Shown piece by piece: positions 6,125 through 21,896 of a stretch of DNA of 64,000 bases; the first letter of the stretch is position 1, and each line of letters opens with the position of its first letter. The translations under genes were made by a program, and so were the position numbers. The stretch lies in IMG/VR virus record IMGVR_UViG_3300005289_000052, positions 179,670-243,669 of that record; one strand, 5' to 3'. The notes under the pieces are model-generated. The model was not told the DNA's origin, did no database searches, and saw only the letters and a list, made by a program, of their open reading frames with translations.

Positions 6125-8345
6125 CTGCGGATGCTGGGACAAAGTCCGAAACCAACTTGGTATTGTTGTCGTTAGACAAGAACACGCCGAGCGATTCCAA
6201 GATCAGATAGAACGGCCGGACTGTAGAGTAGACCAGTTTACGAATGTTCATTGCTGACAATACTTCTTTTGGCAGACCAGTCAACTCCACAACGTCCTTC
6301 GGCAGCAGCAACGTGGTAGCGTTGGTTTTGCCAGCGTAGGTATCGGTGAGGGTTTGTTTGATCTGAGGATCTTCGATCGTATCCAACCACAGGCCCAATG
6401 CCGTTTTGTTAGGCAAGTCCAGGGAGACTTTGATCGCAGAGTACGGAGGTTTTGGAGCTTCCCCGTATTTTGGACGGAACACACGCTCCCACAGGAGGTA
6501 GTGTTGATAAGGAGACTGACCTGGGTTGACGTATGCCGCCGGGTCTTTCACCTGAGTCCGTGCCAAGTAAGTAGATTCAGCGCGCATCACAGAACCAATA
6601 ATGCCGTGTTCGATATCAGCAACACGCTGCATGATTTCCGTGATCTTGATCTTCTTGCCGTCGATGATGCAGTCCATGATTTCACACATGGTCGACGTCA
6701 CTTGTTTCATGATCTGTGGCGGACAGTTAGAGTCTTTGAGGTAAACCCCTTTGATCTCTTCTTCCAGCTTCGAGAACACGTTCCCTTCTTTGGCTGCCTT
6801 GTAGGCGTAGTAATGCTTAGCCATCGAAGTCAGCGAGAACACCGAGAATGCAAACTCGTTCTTCATCGCCAATACGTTCAGCTTCTCTGGTACCACACCG
6901 AGTGTAGTGGACAGCATAGCCAAAACGTGGATGATCGACTGGGTGGCCAGGTAAACCATGGTGTAGTCCACGGCAAACGCGGTTTCACTAAAGTCAATCT
7001 TACCGGTGTACCACTCAACCCAGTTCTGCACGGTGAAGATCGTGGAGTCTGTGTCGGAGGTGATCGCTACGTGTCGGACAGAATCCCGAATCCATGCAAC
7101 CGAGGCTGGCATGTTGTCGGATACCCAGAACGCTTTGATCAGGTACTGGTATTCGTTCAGTACGTGGTGGATGTTCTTGATGGTTGCCCCGATCAAGCAG
7201 TAGCTCGTTGGGTTTACTTCCAGCAAGCGACCCAGACCCAAACCTTGTAGCTCCTTAGCGCACAGGAGGCTCACAAACGCTTTTAAGTCCGCATCCATAC
7301 CCTTGACATAGACCTTGGCTTCTTCCAGCTCCAGCGGCACTTCTACCTTCATGGAGAGGCGAGCCATGAACACCCGCATTGGTCCGTCGTTGAACTTCGC
7401 CAAGTGCCAGCAATCGCCGACATAAGCAAAGGCCGAACGTTGCAGATCGTTCATACCTTCAACCAGCTTACGGATTTCCGCAATCTGACTTTTGTTGGTC
7501 CAGTAGTGGTGAGTCGAGTAAAGGATCAGTTCCATTACTTCGTCTACGGTTGGAGCACGGAACCCGTAGAGGCTCATCGCTTTCTCAATCAGATCGTAGT
7601 CAACGTGACCGATGATGCTGACGATATTTGCCTTCACTACATCAGGACACCAATAATGTCGGTTGCCTGCCAAGAACTTCTCGTTGTTGGCGTTCCCCAA
7701 ACTGGTGGCTACACGGCAGGTCGAAGTCAGGCTCGAGTGAGCAGACTTGTTGTGCAGGATCGTGGAGGTCGACGCTTGTGCCCCGGACAGACTGTTGTTC
7801 GCAATCTTGTACGTGGTTTGTTCGTTCTCCTTAAGTTCTGCCAGTTCTTCCATCTGTACAGCATGGCGGCGGAACTTCTTGACTGCTTCAACATCCCCGG
7901 CTTTCTCAGCCTCATCTGCTTTCAGATTGGATTCTTGTTGCTCCATCTGTGCATTGTGACCTTCCTTCTTTACAGCACCCCGGCCCACAATGTTACCGGT
8001 GATGTATTCCGACAGTAGAGAAGGAATAACGTCCGGGTGTTCGTACACAGTCATGGACGGTGCAAACAACCAGTTGTTATCTTTGATGTCCTTGAGGTAG
8101 GTCGAGTAAGTCATCTCCGTACGCTCACGGTCACCGACTTTGTTCCGGTGCAGGCAGTACAGAGCTGGGTCTTTGATCTCGAATTTACCACCCGGACCTG
8201 TCACACGGTGAATGTACCCTTGACAGTCTTCCAACGGCTTCCCCGTACGCACATGCAAAAAGATTGCCATGTCACGACGGTAGTTAGCCAGAATATCTAG
8301 GTCGCGCTTATAAGCGGACGCTGGCTTGATGAAATGGTTTTCCAT
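6117..8345 (-). CDS. Family B DNA polymerase, polymerase subunit (phiKZ gp50 type)
   Basis: KIANNSLSG (motif B), SDTDSTIF (motif C), KHYYA; probable start MENHF at 8345. Confidence 0.9.
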   Translation of the reverse strand: MENHFIKPASAYKRDLDILANYRRDMAIFLHVRTGKPLEDCQGYIHRVTGPGGKFEIKDPALYCLHRNKVGDRERTEMTYSTYLKDIKDNNWLFAPSMTVYEHPDVIPSLLSEYITGNIVGRGAVKKEGHNAQMEQQESNLKADEAEKAGDVEAVKKFRRHAVQMEELAELKENEQTTYKIANNSLSGAQASTSTILHNKSAHSSLTSTCRVATSLGNANNEKFLAGNRHYWCPDVVKANIVSIIGHVDYDLIEKAMSLYGFRAPTVDEVMELILYSTHHYWTNKSQIAEIRKLVEGMNDLQRSAFAYVGDCWHLAKFNDGPMRVFMARLSMKVEVPLELEEAKVYVKGMDADLKAFVSLLCAKELQGLGLGRLLEVNPTSYCLIGATIKNIHHVLNEYQYLIKAFWVSDNMPASVAWIRDSVRHVAITSDTDSTIFTVQNWVEWYTGKIDFSETAFAVDYTMVYLATQSIIHVLAMLSTTLGVVPEKLNVLAMKNEFAFSVFSLTSMAKHYYAYKAAKEGNVFSKLEEEIKGVYLKDSNCPPQIMKQVTSTMCEIMDCIIDGKKIKITEIMQRVADIEHGIIGSVMRAESTYLARTQVKDPAAYVNPGQSPYQHYLLWERVFRPKYGEAPKPPYSAIKVSLDLPNKTALGLWLDTIEDPQIKQTLTDTYAGKTNATTLLLPKDVVELTGLPKEVLSAMNIRKLVYSTVRPFYLILESLGVFLSNDNNTKLVSDFVPASAAA

Positions 8346-10292: not shown

Positions 10293-10712
10293 TCATCGAA
10301 ATGGTTCAATCAAGATGTTACTTCCGATCCATCTGCGGATCTCGTGATATCCATAGTTAGGTAACGGGGTGTATTGCAAAACCATTTCCCAAACTCGGTC
10401 GTGAATCTCACTAGCGAGTACGGTCAGGTGATGGATAGCAATAGCCTCCCCGTCAGAAAGCTCCGGCATACCAGCAGGCCGGTTAGCAATTAGATAGTCA
10501 GACATGATAGAGAGTGTAGACCATGTCGAATGTGGACGTAAGTCAAAAGACTGATTCAGATTCGACACAGTGAACGACAGCTCAATCAGATCCTTTATTT
10601 CAAGCGTGTGTTCTGCCAAGTACGGACCAAGATGGCTGTACTCGCGCATGATTCGTTCGACGGGAACGAGGATCTGTTGGTTTTGCACGATTACCAATCC
10701 TTCCATTTCCAC
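10293..10712 (-). CDS. Hypothetical protein, tandem run
   Basis: ORF track, AGGAG RBS. Confidence 0.7.
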   Translation of the reverse strand: MEMEGLVIVQNQQILVPVERIMREYSHLGPYLAEHTLEIKDLIELSFTVSNLNQSFDLRPHSTWSTLSIMSDYLIANRPAGMPELSDGEAIAIHHLTVLASEIHDRVWEMVLQYTPLPNYGYHEIRRWIGSNILIEPFR

Positions 10713-10732
10713 TCTCCTGAGAGTGTGTCAGG

Positions 10733-11164
10733 TTACCAGATTTCGATAAGATACCCACGGTCTGTGTGGTTGAGGTCGAAACTCCAATCACGGTGGCGCA
10801 TCAGTTTGGCTAGGTAGGGACGACAGATGCGTCTACCCAAGCCGTACACGTATTCGTAATGCTGTAGCAGGTCTCGCTCGGTGTGGAAGGCGTAGTAATC
10901 ATCCTTACACATCTGGTTTACCAAGATCTCATCCATCGCCATAACGAGACTTTCATGGTAAGCCAAAGGGTCATGAGTCAATTCGCCGTGTATCATGGTT
11001 AGCGTAAAGTCTACATGACCCATACCGATTATTCTCAGGGCCCGATCTTCTAACCTAGGAAAGATACTATCAGGCAAGTAAATGCTGAATATACCCTTAC
11101 AGGTCGGTAAGGTCACCTGTGATACCAAGCTGTCGGCGAAGTTCTGAAGGGTACCAATCGCCAT
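10733..11164 (-). CDS. Hypothetical protein, tandem run
   Basis: ORF track, GGAG RBS. Confidence 0.65.
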   Translation of the reverse strand: MAIGTLQNFADSLVSQVTLPTCKGIFSIYLPDSIFPRLEDRALRIIGMGHVDFTLTMIHGELTHDPLAYHESLVMAMDEILVNQMCKDDYYAFHTERDLLQHYEYVYGLGRRICRPYLAKLMRHRDWSFDLNHTDRGYLIEIW

Positions 11165-12557: not shown

Positions 12558-13210
12558 ACGGCATAAGAAGGGTGAACCCCCACAGCACACCCCTCGGACA
12601 AGGAATGACTGTGGGGTAACCCACCAACAACACCAGTTCGCTTAGGAGGACGAACTTGAAGCAACACCCGGATCGCTTCCCTAAACATACTCAGTCAAGG
12701 TCGGCCGCCAGAGAGCCGAGTATGTTTAAGGCTGCGGTCAAGACGCTAAATCCCACCGGGAAAGAGTGAGAGGGTCAAGACAACAACTTGAGGGATTCGC
12801 CGTCCCTCCAGACCTTTCAGTTCCTTAGCATTTGCGAGACGCTAAGCAACTTCCTTACTGCCCCTGTGTTGGAAGTCGAGGTACACAGGAGTCCCCGGCA
12901 CTACTGGCCGGAGAATTACGCACAGGCGACAAGCCGCGCTCGCAGCGGCCGCCTTATCGCGTCAAGCTGCTTTCACTCTTTGAGCCGTCTACACTTACAC
13001 GGTGACTCGGTTCTTAGCCAAGGCCATGATTTGGGGTTCTGTCCTGAAAGTAGTAACAGTTCCTACGACGCCCGGTTTTACCCGGAGAAAGCACAACCTA
13101 GGGTGAGTGGGAAAGCCGAAACCTTCCAGACAGTTAATAGTCCGACGGGGAGGGACCCTGTCCATGGTGGGGTAGATTAGCTCCCACGCAAGTCTTACGA
13201 TACACTCACT
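12558..13210 (-). ncRNA. Candidate large structured ncRNA block at the 3' end of the tRNA operon
   Basis: No credible ORF; many hairpins; long-range pairs 12761-12769/12973-12981 and 13104-13110/13204-13210; ends in stem plus TTATGCCGTC. Confidence 0.5.
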
Positions 13211-13212
13211 TG

Positions 13213-13298
13213 TGGTACCCGAAGCCGGACTCGAACCGGCACGGCCTAAGGCCAACGCATTTTAAGTGCGGTGCGTCTACCGATTCCGCCATTCGGGT
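13213..13298 (-). tRNA. tRNA-Leu(UAA)
   Basis: Cloverleaf, CT-TAA-AA loop, long variable arm, GGTTCGAGTCC, encoded CCA. Confidence 0.95.
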
Positions 13299-13397
13299 GA
13301 ATGGGTGCCTTCTTTCTATTTGTCTCTGAAAGGGTTCTTTGTTTCCGGCGCAGATCCTAACTCATTGACGAAAGAAGACATTGAAACGTTGAGAGAA

Positions 13398-13472
13398 CGA
13401 CGCTACAGGATTCGAACCTGCGGGAAATACCGGTCGCAATGCGACTGCCTTCGACCACTCAGCCAAGCGCCG
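13398..13472 (-). ncRNA. tRNA-like RNA with collapsed 3-nt anticodon loop and no CCA
   Basis: Acceptor CGGCGCT/AGCGTCG, D arm GCTGAGTGGTCGAAGGC, GTCGC-ATT-GCGAC, T arm GCAGG-TTCGAAT-CCTGT. Confidence 0.7.
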
Positions 13473-13545
13473 AACTCTCAAACTAGATTTCCCCACTAGG
13501 TTAAAGCCTAGCTGCCAAGGTCGGGATCGACCTAGTGGAGAAAGA

Positions 13546-13633
13546 TGGCGGAAGGACAGGGACTCGAACCCTGGGACCTTTTACAGTCGGCGGTTTTCAA
13601 GACCGCTGCAATACGCCGCTATGCGACCCTTCC
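13546..13633 (-). tRNA. tRNA-Ser(UGA)
   Basis: GCGGT-CTTGAAA-ACCGC, long variable arm, GCCA end. Confidence 0.95.
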
Positions 13634-13887
13634 GAAAATCAAGCCAGGGCTATTCCCTGGAGTCACTCCCACGCCTAGGCGACGCGACCGATTAGAGGAA
13701 ACCTGAGAGGACCGATCGGCACGGTTTGTCTCTCACCCTTTTGGGTATGGATGTCTAGACGTTGAGTTGTGTGAGCAACTCCCCATTCGTCCACAGGGCA
13801 GGGCCACCAGCAGGGCAGGCGCTTGGTGTTGGGCGGACCATCCCGTTTATACTCGGGTATCTAAGCGCCTGAGGCGCGATCCATAAA

Positions 13888-13975
13888 TGGCAGTAGATAA
13901 GAGATTCGAACTCTTGTGGCTGTTACACCAACACGCTTTCCAGGCGTGCCCCTTAAGCCTCTCGGGCAATCTACT
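13888..13975 (-). tRNA. tRNA-Ser(GGA)
   Basis: CACGC-CTGGAAA-GCGTG, long variable arm, GCCA end. Confidence 0.95.
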
Positions 13976-14142
13976 GTAAAAGATGTAGCAAATCAATCAT
14001 TACCCGGTGTGCGACGTGTTGTATTTAGACAGCTCGGTGTCCCTGCCAGGATTTCGGGTTGTACCTGGAATACTCTCCCGAAGGACAGTGTTATACCTTT
14101 CGGCGTTTTTAACTATAGGGACTGTTCTATCGCACCACTGAT

Positions 14143-14217
14143 TGAAACCTCTTGATGGAATCGAACCATCGTCTTCCCGCTTGGGCGGCAGGCTATCTAC
14201 CATTGAAATAAAGAGGG
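14143..14217 (-). tRNA. Atypical or pseudo tRNA-Gly(CCC)
   Basis: Cloverleaf with CCTGC-CGCCCAA-GCGGG (G33 instead of U33), good T arm, 1:72 mismatch, ends TTCA not CCA. Confidence 0.6.
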
Positions 14218-14218
14218 T

Positions 14219-14405
14219 GAGTTGTTTCCCTTTGGTCTATGTTCTCTGAGGTCGGACTCGAACCGACAATGTCTAACGCTCTAACCATTACGCTAGCACG
14301 CTTCGACGCACCCACAGACAGGCAGCCCTACTAAGGGGCCAGGGTCATCTTGCCCGAAGGCTCAACCCAGGGTATACCAATTCCCCCACTCGAGGGAAAC
14401 AACTC
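14219..14405 (-). ncRNA. Expanded tRNA-Leu(UAG)-like RNA with extra arms, enclosed by a 13-bp stem
   Basis: Leu-type D arm GGGGAATTGGTATACCC, GGCCC-CTTAGTA-GGGCT arm, T arm GTCGG-TTCGAGT-CCGAC, flanking GAGTTGTTTCCCT/AGGGAAACAACTC. Confidence 0.6.
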
Positions 14406-14585
14406 TGATCATTCTTAAGCAGTAGATTTCACCGTACCGTCGGCTGTAATGTTACTTTCTACTTGCCTAGGCTTTCGCCTTGATTCCCTGCATCCAGACT
14501 CGCGTTACTGGATACTGCTTAAGAACAACAATGACAAACAAGATTCCTTTGTAACGCGTATTGTATTGCCTAATTTTTCAAGGCG

Positions 14586-14665
14586 TGGCCAGGGGAGCCT
14601 TCGGACCCTACTCCCACATGGAACCCCTGTTGGTGGGGCTGCTTTAGAGCTTTTAGCGACTGGCC
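14586..14665 (-). pseudogene. Degenerate tRNA-Leu(CAA)-like element
   Basis: GGCCAG/CTGGCC-A acceptor, GCCCC-ACCAACA-GGGGT arm, variable hairpin; D and T loops non-canonical. Confidence 0.4.
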
Positions 14666-14694
14666 GTTTCACGTTACCGCTGTTTATCAATGTA

Positions 14695-14770
14695 TGGCAC
14701 GCATCCAAGGACTCGAACCTTGAACCTCTGGGTTTGGAGCCCAGCGCTCTGCCAGTTGAGCTAGACACGC
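14695..14770 (-). tRNA. tRNA-Trp(CCA)
   Basis: CTGGG-CTCCAAA-CCCAG, canonical D and T loops, GCCA end. Confidence 0.95.
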
Positions 14771-14879
14771 GTTGTTGCGGTCGCCCACACCACCGGTTAC
14801 TGATACCCTGAAGCGGGTTTCGGGTCATGAGTCCCCGTGCGTCAGTTAACTGCGATTTTACCAATGATGCAGGCGAACA

Positions 14880-14955
14880 TGGTAGCACCAAGTGGGTTCG
14901 AACCACCGACCTCGCCCTTATCAGGGGCGCGCTCTACCAACTGAGCTATAGCGCT
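14880..14955 (-). tRNA. tRNA-Ile(GAU)
   Basis: CGCCC-CTGATAA-GGGCG, ACCA end. Confidence 0.95.
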
Positions 14956-14962
14956 ATGAAAC

Positions 14963-15193
14963 TTAACACAGGATCGCGATACCCTCATCACAGTGACAAG
15001 GACAAGTACAAACCTCTTCGTCCTTACCATCGGGCTTTACAAGCACCCAATTGCGATGTGGTCGCGGTGTAGCGATGTCACGTTCTTCAATGCGAACGAT
15101 CTCACCAAACAGCTTTCGAAGGCGTTCAATATCGGGCGGACTATCGTAACTGGTCCTGAAAGTTGCTTGGGGGTATTTGCAACATCCAAACAT
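14963..15193 (-). CDS. Small Cys-rich protein (76 aa)
   Basis: Likely ATG at 15193 (MFGCCKY...CTCPCHC...C); follows the 60-aa gene. Confidence 0.55.
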   Translation of the reverse strand: MFGCCKYPQATFRTSYDSPPDIERLRKLFGEIVRIEERDIATPRPHRNWVLVKPDGKDEEVCTCPCHCDEGIAILC

Positions 15194-15209
15194 GACGTCA
15201 CCCTTGTGC

Positions 15210-15392
15210 TTAGGAAGCCTTGAGGACTTCGCCGATCTTGATCTCGCGATCGTCGTACACAACCCGGTGGCTGCTTTGACCATCTTGCAAGACGAACTCT
15301 TCATGAATCTCGCCAGTGACGCGATTCACGATACTCACTTTAACTTCCTTATCGGAAGAACAGTGGGCGGCAACAGTAACGGTGGTGGTCAT
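15210..15392 (-). CDS. Small beta-rich hypothetical protein (60 aa)
   Basis: GAGGAG RBS; MTTTVTVAAHC... Confidence 0.75.
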   Translation of the reverse strand: MTTTVTVAAHCSSDKEVKVSIVNRVTGEIHEEFVLQDGQSSHRVVYDDREIKIGEVLKAS

Positions 15393-15401
15393 GGTGACTC
15401 C

Positions 15402-15776
15402 TCAGGCTGAACGACGGTTGTGGTTGACGCGCTGGATTTCCAGCTCGACATACAATTCCATCGGGTACTGAGAAGGCAACTCAACCGAGACACGCGCATT
15501 GGCAGTCTCAGGATTCACGAACACCGCAAACGGTGCATTGGCGAAAGAGCCCAACACACCCTGCATGTTCACACCACGCGCAGCCTCGTTAACAATCGGG
15601 CTGTTGATGTTGCAAGCGATGTCAACACCATCGACGGTGGTAACACGCACAGCTTTCACCGATTCGATCGAGTCGGTTGCGTCGAAGTCTTCGATCTGGG
15701 TAGCCAACAGGCCAAACAGATTGACTTCACTAACCTTCAGCGGCAAGCGCAGATGGTCGACAGGATACTTGTACAT
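15402..15776 (-). CDS. Hypothetical protein; stand-alone paralog of the C-terminal domain of the DUF2829 protein
   Basis: Aligns by eye with the C-terminal ~120 residues of 15786..16418; both end NRRSx. Confidence 0.8.
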   Translation of the reverse strand: MYKYPVDHLRLPLKVSEVNLFGLLATQIEDFDATDSIESVKAVRVTTVDGVDIACNINSPIVNEAARGVNMQGVLGSFANAPFAVFVNPETANARVSVELPSQYPMELYVELEIQRVNHNRRSA

Positions 15777-15785
15777 GACAGCCCC

Positions 15786-16418
15786 TTAATCCGAGCGACG
15801 GTTGCGTTGGCCGTATTCGATACGAAGAACGGCGAACAGTTCGACACCGGCAGTCGGTGCGGCGTGAGCACAGGCTTCCCACATCTGGGTATCTACCTGA
15901 ATCGACAGAGCACGACCATTCGGCATCCGGTCGTTGAACGACTTCATGCGAGTCTCGCTCTTGTGTGCTACTGCTTCAACGACGTTGCTCTGGACGACCA
16001 GGGCATCAACCGTTTCAATGCGCACCACTTGGACTGAGAAGATCGCATCCAGCTTTTCCAACTTGGCGCCAGCGGCTTCACCCAACTCGTACAAGTTGGA
16101 GCGCACATCACCATCAAGCGGAATACGGACCTCGAACTTGTTGACGTAATCCTCAGCATCAAGGACTACCCAGTCGTCAGCCAGGATGTCAGACTGAGAG
16201 GCAACCCACGGCACAAAATCACCGTTGTGTGCTTTCAAGCCCAACCAAGGTCGCAGGTTCGGTGTAGGGTCCTTACGAACGTTGAGCCCAACGGTTCGGG
16301 CACCCACGTCATAGTGACTAGCGCCAACTAAGACGACCCACATGCCTTTACCGTTCCAACCCTCGCGTGTGGCGCGAGAGCCGTGCTTCAATCCCGTAAG
16401 GGCTTGACCGAACTCCAT
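15786..16418 (-). CDS. DUF2829 (Tad2-like anti-defence sponge) domain fused to an unknown C-terminal domain
   Basis: MEFGQAL..LK.G....R.GWNGKGMWV ... FVPWVASQSDILADDW signature; AGGAG RBS. Confidence 0.85.
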   Translation of the reverse strand: MEFGQALTGLKHGSRATREGWNGKGMWVVLVGASHYDVGARTVGLNVRKDPTPNLRPWLGLKAHNGDFVPWVASQSDILADDWVVLDAEDYVNKFEVRIPLDGDVRSNLYELGEAAGAKLEKLDAIFSVQVVRIETVDALVVQSNVVEAVAHKSETRMKSFNDRMPNGRALSIQVDTQMWEACAHAAPTAGVELFAVLRIEYGQRNRRSD

Positions 16419-16439
16419 GTGAAGCTCCTGTTGTGAAAT

Positions 16440-16513
16440 TGGGGTGAAGCCGGGAATCGAACCCTGGTCCTCTGCGCCACAAGCAGATGTTCTACCACTG
16501 AACTAGCAACACC
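16440..16513 (-). tRNA. tRNA-His(GUG)
   Basis: TCTGC-TTGTGGC-GCAGA, G-1:C73, CCA end. Confidence 0.92.
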
Positions 16514-16521
16514 ATTGAAAT

Positions 16522-16609
16522 TGGAGGTGGGTAAGAGATTCGAACTCTTGGAGCTGTTACACCCTGATCCTTAGCAAGGACCCGCAATCGGCCTCTCTGC
16601 CAACCCACC
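16522..16609 (-). tRNA. tRNA-Ser(GCU)
   Basis: GGTCC-TTGCTAA-GGATC, long variable arm, CCA end. Confidence 0.93.
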
Positions 16610-16629
16610 TTAAAACTGTACAACGAAAA

Positions 16630-16704
16630 TGGCTCCGAGACCTGGATTCGAACCAGGGACCAAACGGTTAACAGCCGTCTACTCTACCGCTGAGCTATCC
16701 CGGA
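16630..16704 (-). tRNA. tRNA-Asn(GUU)
   Basis: GACGG-CTGTTAA-CCGTT, GCCA end. Confidence 0.95.
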
Positions 16705-16811
16705 AAGGAAATTGAATGGGAAATGTGCCTCCGTCCCAAAGCGGAGGCGTAGGATATGGAGTGAACCATAACTGACGCCCGCAGCCACCCCGAAGGGCAA
16801 TCCACCACAAA

Positions 16812-16898
16812 TCAACGTAGGTTGCTTTATACCTGACTAAGCGACCAGACCATGGAGGAACTGACTAGGGGTATGATCCCTAGTTCTCCCTACGTTGA
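16812..16898 (-). ncRNA. Circularly permuted tRNA-like (YrlA-like topology) RNA candidate
   Basis: 10-bp terminal stem; T-like arm precedes an acceptor-like hairpin (with internal CCA) and a D-like arm. Confidence 0.5.
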
Positions 16899-16901
16899 AT
16901 A

Positions 16902-16977
16902 TGGCGCCTCCGAAGGGACTTGAACCCTCGGCCCCCGGCGTGACAGGCCGGTGCTCTAACCACTGAGCTACGGAAGC
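16902..16977 (-). tRNA. tRNA-Asp(GUC)
   Basis: CCGGC-CTGTCAC-GCCGG, GCCA end. Confidence 0.95.
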
Positions 16978-17171
16978 GTAAACGTCCTGAGGAAAATGGA
17001 CTCTGCGATCACCCAGACTGTGCCTGTAGGTGCATCACTTGTTGGCTCAAGGTTCGTGTAGACTACCATGGGCCAGGAACAATCTTGAGCGTGTCGACCG
17101 ACGTGGAGCACTAGAAAGCGCAACCCACTAGGAGAGAGGTACTCTCGATCCTTCTCAACAATCTCAATCAT
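16968..17171 (-). CDS. DUF1653-like small protein; stop codon lies inside tRNA-Asp
   Basis: Y..PSG..F.VLHVGRH......MVVY......G.VWV.....F pattern; GAGG RBS. Confidence 0.65.
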   Translation of the reverse strand: MIEIVEKDREYLSPSGLRFLVLHVGRHAQDCSWPMVVYTNLEPTSDAPTGTVWVIAESIFLRTFTLP

Positions 17172-17608
17172 GTTCATTCCTCGAATATGGCTCCGGCTTG
17201 CTTCCCGCCGCAAAGACGGTTCACTAACTCATGTGTAGCCAGACGACCCGCCGGAGAGGTCTTTAACTAGATGCACCAGTATCCCTGAGGTTCCGAAGAA
17301 GGCAGGTACACGATGCAACTCCACTGGACTACGAGTTTGGGTGATCCTCTCGGCAGATTCCCGCCGAGTTAATGCTGTGGGCCGCGGGGAGGGTTCGCTC
17401 AAAAGGCAACCAAAGCGGCTCTACTGCAAAGGATCGTAATCAACTTCCCTCGCACTGAGTGGATTGCTCAGCACTTATTTTCCTTGATCCCCAGGGACGG
17501 TAGGGACATCGACTCGGTGCCTGGCTACCCTTCCACAGGGCTGCTGGTAACGTTGTCTCACAAGGTAAAACCACCGTATCGCCAGCAAGGGTCGTTGCGG
17601 TGTTAAAA

Positions 17609-17684
17609 TGGCGGAGGGTAGTGGGATCGAACCACTGCATGATGGAATCAAAGTCCATTGCCTTACCAACTTGGCTAACCCTCT
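17609..17684 (-). tRNA. tRNA-Gln(UUG)
   Basis: ATGGA-CTTTGAT-TCCAT, GCCA end, 1:72 mismatch. Confidence 0.92.
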
Positions 17685-17834
17685 CTGAAATTTTTACCTC
17701 GCCGCTAAGCACGACACCTAGCGACTTATTATTACCGTGACCCCGGATCAAGGGTTGTCGATCAGGTTCGTTACGCCTGGCCCTACACGGTAAAACCCAT
17801 TGCAAAATCCCTAGGGCTATCACAATGTTAAAAG

Positions 17835-17919
17835 TGGTGGATGATCTAGGACTCGAACCTAGGGTGTATCAATGTGCCGATTTACAGTCGGTTGTCTTCG
17901 CCGCTCGACGCAATCATCC
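17835..17919 (-). tRNA. tRNA-Tyr(GUA)
   Basis: CCGA-CTGTAAA-TCGG, long variable arm, ACCA end. Confidence 0.93.
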
Positions 17920-18196
17920 AGTAAAGCTGACAGTGTTGCGCATCGAAGCGCTGCTGGTTCCCGGACCGCACCAGCTTTCCATTAACGACGGCTGACGCGT
18001 TGTCAGCTATGGCCCTCGTTAATGACTCCCCAGGAGTACACCGCCTCAAAATGGTGCCCCGTTTCCCTATTACGGGAATCTGTTCGACTGACTCCGTGAG
18101 AGGAGAGTCTAGGTTACACGGACTCAATGTCTCCACCCCGAAAGGTTCATGACACGAACTCCCATGGCCTCAGACCAGGACGTGAAACTAAGAATG

Positions 18197-18327
18197 TGGC
18201 CCCGCTACCTGGATTCGAACCAGGGACCTCCCGACGGGCACGCGTGTTCAAACGTTCTCACCGCAGCGCGGCTATTAACGTAACCGCATGTCAGACGAGT
18301 GCTCTATACCAACTGAGCTATAGCCGG
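18197..18327 (-). ncRNA. tRNA-like RNA (GAC/Val-like) with a 53-nt insertion in the anticodon loop
   Basis: Canonical TAGCTCAGTTGGTATAGAGC D arm, CCTGG-TTCGAAT-CCAGG T arm, GCCA end; insert at 18236-18288. Confidence 0.75.
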
Positions 18328-18330
18328 GAA

Positions 18331-18567
18331 TGAGAGAGACCGCTACCCCGATCTACGGACTGTGATACTCCAAGGGACTCAGGCGAAAGGGAACCGAAAG
18401 CCTGAGAACTGCGGTATGCAAGCGCAGTTTGTCTATTACCCCGGAGACGGGTCACGTGCAGTATGTTGGGTGTGTGGGGTCCGTCAAGTCTCCACGTTCC
18501 CCCTTGGTGGCGAAACCAAGAGCGTGCTGGAACTTTCCCTTCAACCTGCTTCGCGTCATTTCTCTCA
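18331..18567 (-). ncRNA. Candidate structured leader RNA of the tRNA operon
   Basis: Ends pair (TGAGAGA/TCTCTCA); several internal hairpins; no credible ORF. Confidence 0.4.
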
Positions 18568-18595
18568 TGATATCATTGAGCTATGTATTTTTTTA
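18567..18595 (-). promoter_or_regulatory. Putative middle-type promoter driving the tRNA/ncRNA operon
   Basis: AAAAAAATACAT resembles phiKZ middle motif AAanntTAC, about 20 nt upstream of the RNA block and just past a terminator. Confidence 0.4.
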
Positions 18596-18610
18596 CTGTA
18601 CTAGTCAGGG

Positions 18611-20930: not shown

Positions 20931-21896
20931 TTACAGAACCAGGAAGTCCTGGGTTGCAGCGTCTTTCTCGGTCACGAGGACTTTGGCAGAGCTGCGGCCT
21001 TCACGACGTTCCACGAATTGCTCGACCGTACGGTTAAGCGTGTCGTAAGATTGGCCAAGGAACTGCGTCGAAATGACGTAGTGCAGTTCGCTGACACCCT
21101 CGACCGGCGTCTGGAAGAAACCGGCGCAGGAGTATTCCGGCACTGGGCTTTGCAGTTGCGCTTGGTCGCGATCGGCGTACAGGCTTGCGATTGCGATTGG
21201 GTCCAGGATTTCCTTGACCTTCTCGGCGTCGCTGTAGATGTCCAGCAAGGCCAGTTGTGCTTCGACCGAAGTGGACTTGTTGAAACGCAGCCAGTGCAGA
21301 ACGTCCATGGTGTCCAGCTCGGCGTTCTGGCGGGAAGCCAGGTAGCGCAGGCAGGTGATGGCGAAGTGCAGTTGACCGTCGATGGTAGAACGCGTGGTGC
21401 CCTCGCCACTGTGGCGGTAGAAGGCAACGACCGGAACCTTGATACCGTTGGAGATCGCCGACAGCGACTTCAAGGTGTTCAGGCTGTTCTGTGCAGTGAT
21501 GGTGGACTCGGCGGAACCCGCACTGACCACGACCACAGCTTTGCCACGTTCCAGGAGTTCACGAACGATCAGCGGACCGATCACCGAACCCGAACCGCCC
21601 GAGGCGGAGAACACGACGATGTTGAAATCTTCTGGTGGCTGAGCCAACAGGATTTGCTTGATGCTGTCCGAGATGACCTGGTGGTTCTCGCGACGAACCT
21701 TACCGGAACCGTCAGTGCCTTCGAGCACGAAGATGGCTTCGGCTGGGATGGTGGTGTCCAGGTTGGAACGGCTGGTGTCTACGAAAGAGACCAGTGGGGT
21801 GGCGAAACCTGCGACTTCTTTCTGGCCGAGGTAACGTTTGGCGATGTTGTTGCCCAGACCGCCTGCACCGTAAATACGAACTTTGCCTTGAGACAT
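20931..21896 (-). CDS. phuZ: PhuZ phage tubulin
   Basis: GAGGLGNN, VDTSRSN, GSGKVR, ASGGSGSV tubulin signature, ELDTMD (T7 loop), acidic/hydrophobic C-tail. Confidence 0.95.
   Translation of the reverse strand: MSQGKVRIYGAGGLGNNIAKRYLGQKEVAGFATPLVSFVDTSRSNLDTTIPAEAIFVLEGTDGSGKVRRENHQVISDSIKQILLAQPPEDFNIVVFSASGGSGSVIGPLIVRELLERGKAVVVVSAGSAESTITAQNSLNTLKSLSAISNGIKVPVVAFYRHSGEGTTRSTIDGQLHFAITCLRYLASRQNAELDTMDVLHWLRFNKSTSVEAQLALLDIYSDAEKVKEILDPIAIASLYADRDQAQLQSPVPEYSCAGFFQTPVEGVSELHYVISTQFLGQSYDTLNRTVEQFVERREGRSSAKVLVTEKDAATQDFLVL

What the first reader, a model, noticed from the sequence alone, without database searches (positions are those of the whole stretch)
13389..13481. tRNA-like RNA lacking an anticodon loop
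Seen: near-consensus D and T arms and a 7-bp acceptor, but the anticodon arm is GTCGC-ATT-GCGAC (3-nt loop). There is no CCA, and the acceptor is extended by TTGAGAG/CTCTCAA. Inference: it cannot decode, and would be an uncleavable elbow mimic for anticodon nucleases, T-box-like or RelA-type sensors.
Basis: partly seen in the sequence, partly recalled or inferred. Interest (0 to 1): 0.65.

Follow-up and report, generated by a model that had tools for sequence, protein, structure and literature searches.

The report
Non-decoding tRNA-shaped RNA in jumbo phage
A jumbo phage's tRNA gene cluster holds a small tRNA-shaped RNA whose anticodon loop is closed into a tiny hairpin and whose two ends pair with each other, so it almost certainly cannot decode; it is an optional, fast-changing cassette that probably acts as a tRNA look-alike.

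Summary
Window 13387-13482 (minus strand) lies in the tRNA cluster of a 243.7-kb PhuZ-encoding (nucleus-forming type) jumbo phage. It has an intact 7-bp acceptor with G3.U70, a Ser-type D arm, a consensus T arm and no CCA. Its flanks pair as UUGAGAG/CUCUCAA.

ARAGORN and Rfam call it tRNA-Ala(UGC), but that threading needs an anticodon stem of +3.6 kcal/mol. The hairpin GUCGC-AUU-GCGAC is -5.8 kcal/mol, with pair probability >=0.985. All 12 other tRNAs of the cluster have stable canonical arms.

It is not an assembly error: three independent assemblies are identical. A fourth differs only in the triloop (AUU>AAU), which would destroy U33.

A sister allele in at least four samples looks tRNA-Ser(UGA)-derived. 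It has a 6-bp stem capped by GAAA instead of an anticodon loop. It keeps G3.U70 and lacks CCA. It keeps the end-to-end helix through a compensatory A:U insertion, with compensatory changes at pairs 7-66 and 50-64. Two relatives lack the cassette; two carry an unrelated tRNA there.

Best reading: a selected, non-decoding tRNA mimic, function unproven; a decoy role is inferred. Main rival: a decaying duplicate.

The parts
13475..13481 (-). 5' strand of the end-to-end (leader/trailer) helix, UUGAGAG
   Evidence: Pairs 7/7 with 13389-13395. The sister allele has UUGAGAAG/CUUCUCAA, a compensatory A:U insertion. Strongest leader/trailer duplex among about 66 tRNA genes.
13473..13474 (-). Unpaired UU facing U73-U74: a 2x2 internal loop at the expected RNase P / RNase Z cleavage sites
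   Evidence: Sequence. It stays unpaired in the sister allele (CU facing UU). The cleavage role is inferred.
13466..13472 (-). Acceptor 5' strand, CGGCGCU (C1-G72, G3.U70)
   Evidence: ARAGORN and Infernal alignments. G3.U70 is kept in the sister allele. Pair 7-66 changes U-A to G-C.
13447..13463 (-). D arm, GCU-GAGUGGUCGAA-GGC (Ser/Cys type, G18G19 present)
   Evidence: The stretch UGGCUGAGUGGUCGAAGGCAG is identical to the D arm of tRNA-Ser(GCU) genes in 9 viral contigs. The core GAGUGGUCGAAGGC recurs in tRNA-Cys genes of other viral contigs.
13433..13445 (-). Closed 'anticodon' hairpin, GUCGC-AUU-GCGAC (5 bp, 3-nt loop)
   Evidence: -5.8 kcal/mol against +3.6 for the canonical 7-nt-loop threading; p>=0.985. 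The loop is AAU in L040/L043 with the stem unchanged.
13422..13432 (-). 11-nt linker CGGUAUUUCCC; the remnant of the old 3' stem strand and of the variable arm
   Evidence: Comparison with the sister allele ...GACGGU-GGGGCUUGCUCCC.
13405..13421 (-). T arm, GCAGG-UUCGAAU-CCUGU
   Evidence: Infernal alignment. Pair 50-64 changes C-G to U-A and pair 49-65 changes G.U to G-C in the sister allele.
13396..13404 (-). Acceptor 3' strand AGCGUCG, then U73 and U74; no CCA
13389..13395 (-). 3' strand of the end-to-end helix, CUCUCAA
   Evidence: As for 13475-13481.
13387..13482 (-). The whole cassette, as delimited by comparison with relatives
   Evidence: Logan contigs of four runs are identical over 13489-13830. 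In three of them 13395-13488 is replaced by 101 other letters; in the fourth the segment is missing. Fetched relatives show the sister allele, two empty sites and an unrelated tRNA at this place.

Best explanation
It is a non-decoding, tRNA-shaped RNA gene. It is a paralogue that looks derived from a class-II tRNA-Ser(UGA)-like gene, and it sits as an optional cassette between tRNA-Ser(UGA) and tRNA-Leu(UAA) in the phage's tRNA cluster.

Shown:
- The acceptor, D arm and T arm (the tRNA 'elbow') are intact.
- Helices are kept through compensatory changes between alleles.
- The anticodon arm is closed by a minimal loop (AUU here, GAAA in the sister allele).
- CCA is not encoded.
- The 5' and 3' flanks form a conserved 7-8 bp helix that extends the acceptor across an always-unpaired 2x2 loop.

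Inferred:
- It is transcribed with the cluster.
- Either it stays closed as a ~93-nt RNA without a free acceptor end, or host RNase P and RNase BN/Z cut at the 2x2 loop and the host CCA-adding enzyme finishes it. The G3.U70 pair would then make it a possible AlaRS substrate.
- In either form it cannot read a codon.
- It most likely works by occupying a protein that recognises tRNA shape: a competitive, uncleavable tRNA mimic in the phage-host conflict over tRNAs.
For: - Context: a 243,669-bp virus record with direct terminal repeats and a PhuZ tubulin. All its tRNAs lie in this one cluster.
- Non-decoding: energies, with the 12-tRNA control; AUU>AAU removes the would-be U33; the sister allele's arm is a 6-bp stem with a GAAA loop, -6.2 kcal/mol, against -3.0 for ARAGORN's 8-nt-loop reading.
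- Selection on shape, WIN against sister allele: pair 7-66 U-A>G-C; pair 50-64 C-G>U-A; pair 49-65 G.U>G-C; the extension gains a matched A:U pair; the closed hairpin is 5 bp in both alleles, with three positions changed on both sides; only one pair breaks (5-68).
- Ser ancestry: best database matches are phage tRNA-Ser genes. The D arm is identical to tRNA-Ser D arms. Infernal aligns a long variable arm in the sister allele.
- Real and recurrent: WIN allele in 3 samples, the AAU variant in 1, the sister allele in at least 4.
- Accessory, conflict-type locus: present, absent or replaced among near-identical phages. A Tad2-like gene lies inside the cluster.
- Other tRNA genes of the group also carry disrupted anticodon arms on intact bodies.
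Against: - No expression data were obtained, and no binding partner was identified.
- Only three distinct sequences of the family exist, so the covariation evidence is thin. The compensatory changes could date from a time when the ancestor was still a working tRNA.
- Two relatives have simply lost the cassette, so it is dispensable at least in some settings.
- The 99% identity between WIN and L043 says nothing about constraint, because the surrounding block (13299-13633) is also 95-98% identical.
- The phage encodes no recognisable CCA-adding enzyme, RNA ligase or SmpB.
- No family member was found outside this phage lineage.
Confidence: 0.4

Rival explanations
1. Decaying duplicate (tRNA pseudogene). 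A copy of a Ser-type tRNA gene lost its anticodon loop, variable arm and CCA. It is on its way to deletion and has no function.
For: - Lowest Rfam score in the cluster.
- The sister allele has one broken acceptor pair, G5xG68.
- Two relatives have deleted it, with two different junctions.
- The cluster is a mosaic with several replaced spacers.
- The family is confined to one phage lineage.
Against: - Damage is confined to the decoding parts.
- Acceptor, D and T arms remain perfect in the window allele.
- Two pairs changed on both sides while keeping pairing.
- The flank helix gained a matched A:U pair.
- In both alleles the anticodon arm is a perfect, extra-stable capped hairpin rather than random debris.
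- From general knowledge, phage genomes delete useless DNA quickly, yet each allele recurs unchanged in 3-4 independent samples.
Confidence: 0.3
2. RNA-processing or stability module. The tRNA shape and the closing helix serve as entry sites for RNase P, RNase Z or RNase III, or as a protective cap, for maturation of the polycistronic tRNA-cluster transcript. This would resemble tRNA punctuation or rRNA processing stems.
For: - A conserved closing helix with an always-open 2x2 loop exactly at the RNase P/Z positions.
- Other RNAs in the cluster also have closing helices: the ~190-nt RNA at 14215-14400 has a 13-bp one, and tRNA-Leu(UAA) has conserved leader/trailer pairing.
- A shared TTTCAAT motif follows most tRNAs.
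Against: - Genuine tRNAs lie 73 nt upstream and about 100 nt downstream and already supply such sites.
- Relatives without the cassette keep identical neighbours.
- This reading does not explain why the anticodon arm is rebuilt as a capped hairpin in both alleles.
Confidence: 0.15
3. Functional decoding tRNA-Ala(UGC), as ARAGORN and Infernal annotate it. It would be matured by RNase BN/Z plus CCA addition, as happens for some phage T4 tRNAs.
For: - ARAGORN calls tRNA-Ala(UGC); Rfam gives 36.5 bits.
- G3.U70 matches the alanine identity element, and the threaded loop reads A-U-UGC-G-A.
- Lack of encoded CCA is not disqualifying, since tRNA-Gly(CCC) of this cluster also lacks it yet has a normal arm.
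Against: - The canonical stem is +3.6 kcal/mol with a CxC closing mismatch; the competing hairpin is 9.4 kcal/mol better.
- All 12 other tRNAs fold canonically.
- The L040/L043 variant has A at position 33.
- G3.U70 is also present in the sister allele, whose loop carries no alanine anticodon. The UGC reading is therefore roughly a 1-in-16 coincidence.
- The threaded variable region is 7 nt.
- GCA is the least used Ala codon in the phage, at 18%.
Confidence: 0.05
4. DNA-level element. The cassette is a small mobile or recombination unit with 7-8 bp inverted ends, and the tRNA shape is incidental.
For: - Discrete presence/absence and replacement exactly at the inverted-repeat boundaries.
- GTT occurs on both sides, as a possible 3-bp duplication (read by eye).
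- Two slightly different empty junctions exist.
Against: - Single copy in the genome.
- No transposase or homing endonuclease was recognised next to it.
- A 3-bp repeat is not significant.
- The inverted ends are positioned to stack coaxially on the acceptor, which is an RNA-level logic.
- The internal helices co-vary.
Confidence: 0.07

Closest known systems
Phage tRNAs with altered anticodon loops proposed to resist host anticodon nucleases (van den Berg et al. 2023, eLife, PMC10264068)
   Same: A phage-encoded tRNA-body RNA in a tRNA cluster. The change is concentrated in the anticodon loop while the body stays intact. The context is an arms race.
   Different: Those tRNAs keep a 7-nt loop and still decode. 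Here the loop is abolished (3 nt, or a GAAA cap), CCA is missing and the ends are paired. Any benefit would have to come from mimicry, not from replacing depleted tRNAs.
tmRNA tRNA-like domain
   Same: Acceptor with G3.U70, a T arm, no anticodon. It would be chargeable with alanine independently of an anticodon.
   Different: No mRNA-like domain, tag ORF or pseudoknots. ARAGORN's tmRNA search is negative. It has a full Ser-type D arm, no encoded CCA, and no phage SmpB.
YrlA (bacterial/phage Y-RNA-like tRNA mimic bound by Ro60/Rsr); described from memory
   Same: A close tRNA mimic with conserved D/T elbow and no free CCA end. YrlA is known in phages.
   Different: The topology is permuted. In YrlA the 5'/3' ends extend the anticodon-stem equivalent and carry the Ro-binding helix. 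Here the ends extend the acceptor. The Rfam scan of this stretch lists only tRNA and a weak mascRNA match. No Ro60 gene was found: the single six-frame TROVE match is antisense, has 3 stops and is not reproduced.
mascRNA/MEN-beta tRNA-like RNAs and MHV68 viral tRNA-like RNAs; described from memory
   Same: tRNA-shaped, with reduced or non-functional anticodon arms. They are processed by RNase P/Z, not used in translation, and serve as processing signals or mimics.
   Different: They are eukaryotic or herpesviral and show no homology: RF01684 scores 13.7 bits against a gathering score of 42.5.
Stable RNAs of unknown function in the phage T4 tRNA gene cluster (species 1 and 2); described from memory
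   Same: Small non-tRNA stable RNAs co-encoded and co-transcribed with phage tRNAs. Some T4 tRNAs also lack encoded CCA.

Membership tests
Elongator tRNA (tRNA-Ala UGC) | Cloverleaf match to the tRNA covariance model above its curated threshold | tested here: met
   RF00005 scores 36.5 bits against a gathering score of 29, the lowest of the cluster. ARAGORN calls tRNA-Ala(UGC).
Elongator tRNA (tRNA-Ala UGC) | Stable 5-bp anticodon stem presenting a 7-nt loop | tested here: not met
   The canonical stem is +3.6 kcal/mol with a CxC mismatch. The triloop hairpin is -5.8 kcal/mol with p>=0.985. The 12 control tRNAs range from -2.6 to -7.5 kcal/mol.
Elongator tRNA (tRNA-Ala UGC) | Invariant U33 and a conserved anticodon among alleles | tested here: not met
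   L040/L043 have A at the would-be position 33. The sister allele has UGAAAG/GAAA and no alanine anticodon.
Elongator tRNA (tRNA-Ala UGC) | G3:U70 alanine identity pair | tested here: met
   G3.U70 is present in both alleles. Charging was not tested.
Elongator tRNA (tRNA-Ala UGC) | 3' CCA, encoded as in the other tRNAs of this cluster or added later | tested here: not met
   Not encoded: U73 is followed by UCUCUCAA. Post-transcriptional addition is not testable here.
tmRNA | tRNA-like domain plus an mRNA-like tag reading frame and pseudoknots | tested here: not met
   ARAGORN run with tmRNA detection finds none in the genome. The element is only 76-96 nt.
YrlA / Y RNA | Match to a described Y-RNA family, a Ro-binding stem formed by the RNA ends, and an associated Ro60 (TROVE) gene | tested here: not met
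   At E<=10 the stretch matches only tRNA and, weakly, mascRNA. The TROVE six-frame match at window 10506-10892(+) is antisense to called genes, has 3 stops, and is not reproduced on ORFs.
mascRNA/MEN-beta tRNA-like | Match to RF01684 at its gathering score | tested here: not met
   13.7 bits against 42.5, E=3.2.
Class-II tRNA-Ser (as ancestor, not as present identity) | Ser-type D arm (3-bp stem, long loop) and a long variable arm | tested here: inconclusive
   The D arm is identical to phage tRNA-Ser D arms. The variable arm is present in the sister allele but reduced to a short remnant in the window allele. The acceptor is unlike Ser (C1-G72, U73).
MITE-like mobile element | Terminal inverted repeats, target-site duplication and multiple copies | tested here: not met
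   A 7-bp inverted repeat is present. It is single copy in the genome. Only an insignificant GTT repeat flanks it.

The most novel reading that the evidence does not exclude
Nucleus-forming jumbo phages of this lineage encode a family of purpose-built, anticodon-less tRNA mimics. These keep an intact elbow, have a capped anticodon stem, and have an acceptor end closed by a processing helix. They act as uncleavable competitive inhibitors or sponges of host tRNA-targeting immune effectors. Alternatively, after CCA addition they act as alanine-accepting non-decoding tRNAs. Alleles are swapped as cassettes in an arms race.
Probability: 0.2. Interest if true: 0.75.

Novelty: new variant of a known kind. 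Interest (0 to 1): 0.5.

Why it matters
Automatic annotation counts this gene as a tRNA-Ala, which inflates phage tRNA repertoires and distorts codon-compensation analyses.

If the RNA is functional, it would be an RNA-level counterpart of protein anti-defence factors: a tRNA look-alike kept for its shape rather than for decoding. That would extend the current idea that phage tRNAs exist to survive host tRNA nucleases.

The natural allele series gives a ready-made experiment. It comprises the triloop form, the GAAA-capped form, the empty site and an unrelated tRNA at the same place.

The locus also shows how a tRNA gene can be converted stepwise into a structured non-coding RNA.

Tried and rejected
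- Sequencing or assembly error: rejected. The element is identical in JGI 3300005289, JGI 2162886007 and ENA ERZ27251527.
- 'Relatives have a normal 7-nt loop': not found. Homologous alleles have AAU or GAAA/UGAAAG loops. Only the unrelated tRNA at this site in L042 has a normal loop.
- True tRNA-Ala: rejected on energy, on the U33 variant, and because G3.U70 does not track an alanine anticodon across alleles.
- tmRNA, YrlA/Ro60 and mascRNA membership: rejected.
- Phage-encoded CCA-adding enzyme (PF01743), SmpB (PF01668) and RNA ligase (PF09414): none found.
- Wider family search:
  - Exact and degenerate pattern scans of IMG/VR and of JGI metagenomes found only this lineage.
  - L018/L019 share the D and T arms and have an AU-rich stretch in place of the anticodon arm, but no closing helix (read by eye). 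They are probably an independent case.
  - BLAST against whole relatives G001-G005 found nothing.
- Using the 99% WIN/L043 identity as evidence of constraint: rejected, because the whole 13299-13633 block is 95-98% identical.
- Promoter and terminator scan: uninformative.
- MFE folding of the bare 76-mer is not better than shuffles (z = -0.56). With the flanks it is (z = -3.1).
- A covariance model was not built. There are only three distinct sequences, and MAFFT misaligned the helix insertion.
- No alternative genetic code was used.

Full report
**Context.** The window is the last 64 kb of a 243,669-bp IMG/VR virus record with direct terminal repeats. It encodes a PhuZ-type tubulin at 20931-21896(-), the hallmark of nucleus-forming jumbo phages. 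All of the phage's tRNA genes lie in one minus-strand cluster at window 13213-18327. The finding is the second gene from the 3' end of that cluster. It lies between tRNA-Ser(UGA) and tRNA-Leu(UAA).

**Observation.** Read on the minus strand, the RNA is:

U-UUGAGAG-UU-CGGCGCU-UG-GCU-GAGUGGUCGAA-GGC-A-GUCGC-AUU-GCGAC-CGGUAUUUCCC-GCAGG-UUCGAAU-CCUGU-AGCGUCG-UU-CUCUCAA-CG

- a 7-bp acceptor;
- near-consensus D and T arms;
- a 5-bp hairpin with a 3-nt loop;
- no CCA;
- a 7-bp helix between the flanks, separated from the acceptor by a 2x2 U/U loop.

They call it tRNA-Ala(UGC) at 36.5 bits. That reading happens to agree with a G3.U70 pair.

**Which fold.** The canonical anticodon stem (G.U, U.G, C-G, G-C, CxC) evaluates to +3.6 kcal/mol. 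The triloop hairpin evaluates to -5.8 kcal/mol. With acceptor, D and T arms held fixed, the triloop pairs have probabilities of 0.985-1.0 and the canonical pairs about 0. As a control, the 12 other ARAGORN tRNAs of the cluster have canonical arms of -2.6 to -7.5 kcal/mol, and for most of them that arm is also the MFE. ARAGORN shows CCA on ten of those twelve. tRNA-Gly(CCC) clearly lacks it. tRNA-His is shown without a complete CCA, though read by eye with an encoded G-1 it may carry one. The flank helix (-8.8 kcal/mol) and its sister allele (-9.5) are the strongest leader/trailer duplexes among about 66 tRNA genes of this phage group. A helix of at least 7 bp abutting the acceptor arises in 0.16% of shuffles.

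**Relatives.** PhuZ led to five related IMG/VR contigs. In the closest, L002, the flanking tRNAs are about 95% identical, but a different CCA-less tRNA-like gene occupies the site.

Laying Logan contigs of four runs from four studies on 12900-14300 showed phages identical over 13489-13830. In three of them 13395-13488 is replaced by 101 other letters. In the fourth the segment is missing.

Neighbouring small proteins and their 90%-cluster variants brought in the actual contigs. Five states occupy this site:
- The window allele, in three independent assemblies (JGI 3300005289, JGI 2162886007, ENA ERZ27251527), 100% identical.
- The same allele with one substitution in the triloop, AUU>AAU (JGI 3300028608).
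- A homologous 101-103-nt sister allele in at least four samples (L031, L036, L039, L053).
- Two empty sites with slightly different junctions (L032, L033).
- An unrelated class-I CCA-less tRNA (L042), which in L002 carries a 17-nt larger loop.

**The sister allele.** Its sequence is:

UUUGAGAAG-CU-CGGCGCG-UG-GCU-GAGUGGUUUAA-GGC-A-ACCGUU-GAAA-GACGGU-GGGGCUUGCUCCC-GUAGG-UUCGAAU-CCUAC-CGGGUCG-UU-CUUCUCAA

- Infernal aligns it as a class-II tRNA with a one-nucleotide deletion in the anticodon loop, at 33.2 bits.
- ARAGORN can only offer an 8-nt loop.
- The best fold of the arm is a 6-bp stem with a GAAA loop at -6.2 kcal/mol, against -3.0 for the 8-nt-loop reading.
- Its best database matches are phage tRNA-Ser genes.
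- The D arm through the start of the anticodon stem nearly equals that of tRNA-Ser(UGA) in relatives L003-L006.

The family therefore looks derived from a class-II tRNA-Ser(UGA)-type gene that acquired a different acceptor (C1-G72, G3.U70, U73).

**Comparison of the two alleles.**
- Acceptor pair 7-66 is U-A in one and G-C in the other.
- T-stem pair 50-64 is C-G against U-A, and pair 49-65 is G.U against G-C.
- The flank helix is UUGAGAG/CUCUCAA against UUGAGAAG/CUUCUCAA, a matched A:U insertion.
- The 2x2 loop stays unpaired (UU/UU against CU/UU).
- G3.U70 is kept.
- One pair breaks (G5xG68).
- Both alleles carry a perfect 5-6 bp hairpin directly after position 26, with three positions changed on both sides.

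Overall identity of the element is about 75%.

I read this as selection for the tRNA body and for a closed arm, not for any anticodon. Because G3.U70 is a family trait that does not track an alanine anticodon, the 'UGC' in the window allele is best taken as a roughly 1-in-16 coincidence. The AAU variant removes the would-be U33.

**Limits.**
- Only three distinct sequences exist.
- The compensatory changes could predate the loss of decoding.
- The high WIN/L043 identity is uninformative, since the whole 13299-13633 block is 95-98% identical while neighbouring segments are 84-90%.
- The cluster is a recombinational mosaic.
- No RNA evidence was obtained.
- The phage has no recognisable CCA-adding enzyme, SmpB or RNA ligase, so any maturation would use host enzymes.
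- A six-frame TROVE (Ro60) match at 10506-10892(+) is antisense to called genes, contains three stops and is not reproduced by hmmscan on the ORFs. I treat it as spurious.

**Mechanism.** Shown: the structure, the inability to present an anticodon, the lack of CCA, the conserved end-to-end helix, and the cassette behaviour. Everything below is inferred.

The RNA is made with the cluster transcript. It may persist as a ~93-nt closed tRNA mimic. Alternatively it may be opened at the 2x2 loop by RNase P and RNase BN/Z and receive CCA, after which AlaRS might charge it through G3.U70.

My preferred function is mimicry of tRNA shape towards a tRNA-binding protein, most plausibly a host tRNA-directed defence effector. 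The reasons are:
- The cassette is optional, allelically diverse and exchanged between near-identical phages.
- It lies in an accessory stretch that also holds a Tad2-like gene.
- Several other tRNA genes of this phage group also have disrupted anticodon arms on intact bodies.

This extends, but differs from, the published proposal that phage tRNAs carry anticodon-loop changes to resist host nucleases while still decoding (PMC10264068).

T-box and RelA mimicry are unlikely, from general knowledge of host range and of A-site sensing.

The main rival is a decaying duplicate. Lesser rivals are a processing module, a genuine tRNA-Ala and a DNA-level mobile unit.

**Verdict.** I classify it as a new variant of a known kind, namely a tRNA-derived, tRNA-like non-coding RNA in a phage tRNA cluster. 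It is mis-annotated by standard tools as tRNA-Ala. Interest is moderate.

Noticed in passing
window 14215-14400 (-): A conserved structured RNA of about 190 nt with no Rfam match. It has a 13-bp closing helix (GAGUUGUUUCCCU/AGGGAAACAACUC) and an inner helix GUCUGUG/CAUAGAC that encloses a D-like hairpin and a consensus T arm, with no anticodon arm. It is conserved in L043, L003 and L004. ARAGORN with intron search miscalls it tRNA-Val with a 61-nt intron.
   Followed up: partly
window 18197-18327 (-); L002 13543-13675; L003 13973-14129: A tRNA (Rfam 44.9 bits) with encoded CCA and a structured insertion of about 53 nt just after the anticodon loop. ARAGORN calls it Val(GAC) with an intron at 40/41. 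Relatives carry inserts of different length, with a co-varying hairpin. The nature of the insert (intron or permanent extension) is unknown.
   Followed up: partly
window 15786-16418 (-): A 210-aa ORF with a Tad2-like (Thoeris anti-defence 2, PF11195) domain lies inside the tRNA cluster.
   Followed up: no
L002 17800-17897; L042 about 6905-6990: At the same site as the finding, other relatives carry an unrelated CCA-less class-I tRNA. L042 has a normal loop CUUAGUG (anticodon UAG). L002 has the same gene with a 17-nt larger loop.
   Followed up: partly
window 14144-14218 (-) and orthologues in L031, L039, L004, L005: A CCA-less tRNA whose anticodon differs among related phages: CCC here and in L039, UCC in L031; similar CCA-less genes read CAC in L005 and CGC in L004.
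   Followed up: no
L018 6092-6168; L019 4585-4661 and 5125-5237; L021 10090-10167: Unrelated viral contigs with odd tRNA-likes. One has the same Ser-type D arm and T arm as the finding, but an AU-rich 24-nt stretch in place of the anticodon arm and no CCA. One has a 49-nt insert. One has a 9-nt loop (CCUA) next to a tRNA(CUA).
   Followed up: partly
window 13000-18600 (-): A TTTCAAT-like motif follows the 3' end of most tRNAs of the cluster. tRNA-Leu(UAA) has a conserved leader/trailer complementarity of -6 to -8 kcal/mol in four genomes.
   Followed up: no
window 10506-10892 (+): A six-frame match to the Pfam TROVE (Ro60) domain: 25.1 bits, E=7.8e-7. It is antisense to two called genes, has 3 in-frame stops, and is not reproduced by hmmscan on the ORFs. 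Probably spurious.
   Followed up: partly
window 13831-13887: A second replaced segment in the cluster. Relatives carry 184 or 284 other letters here, which shows that the spacers between tRNAs are a recombinational mosaic.
   Followed up: no
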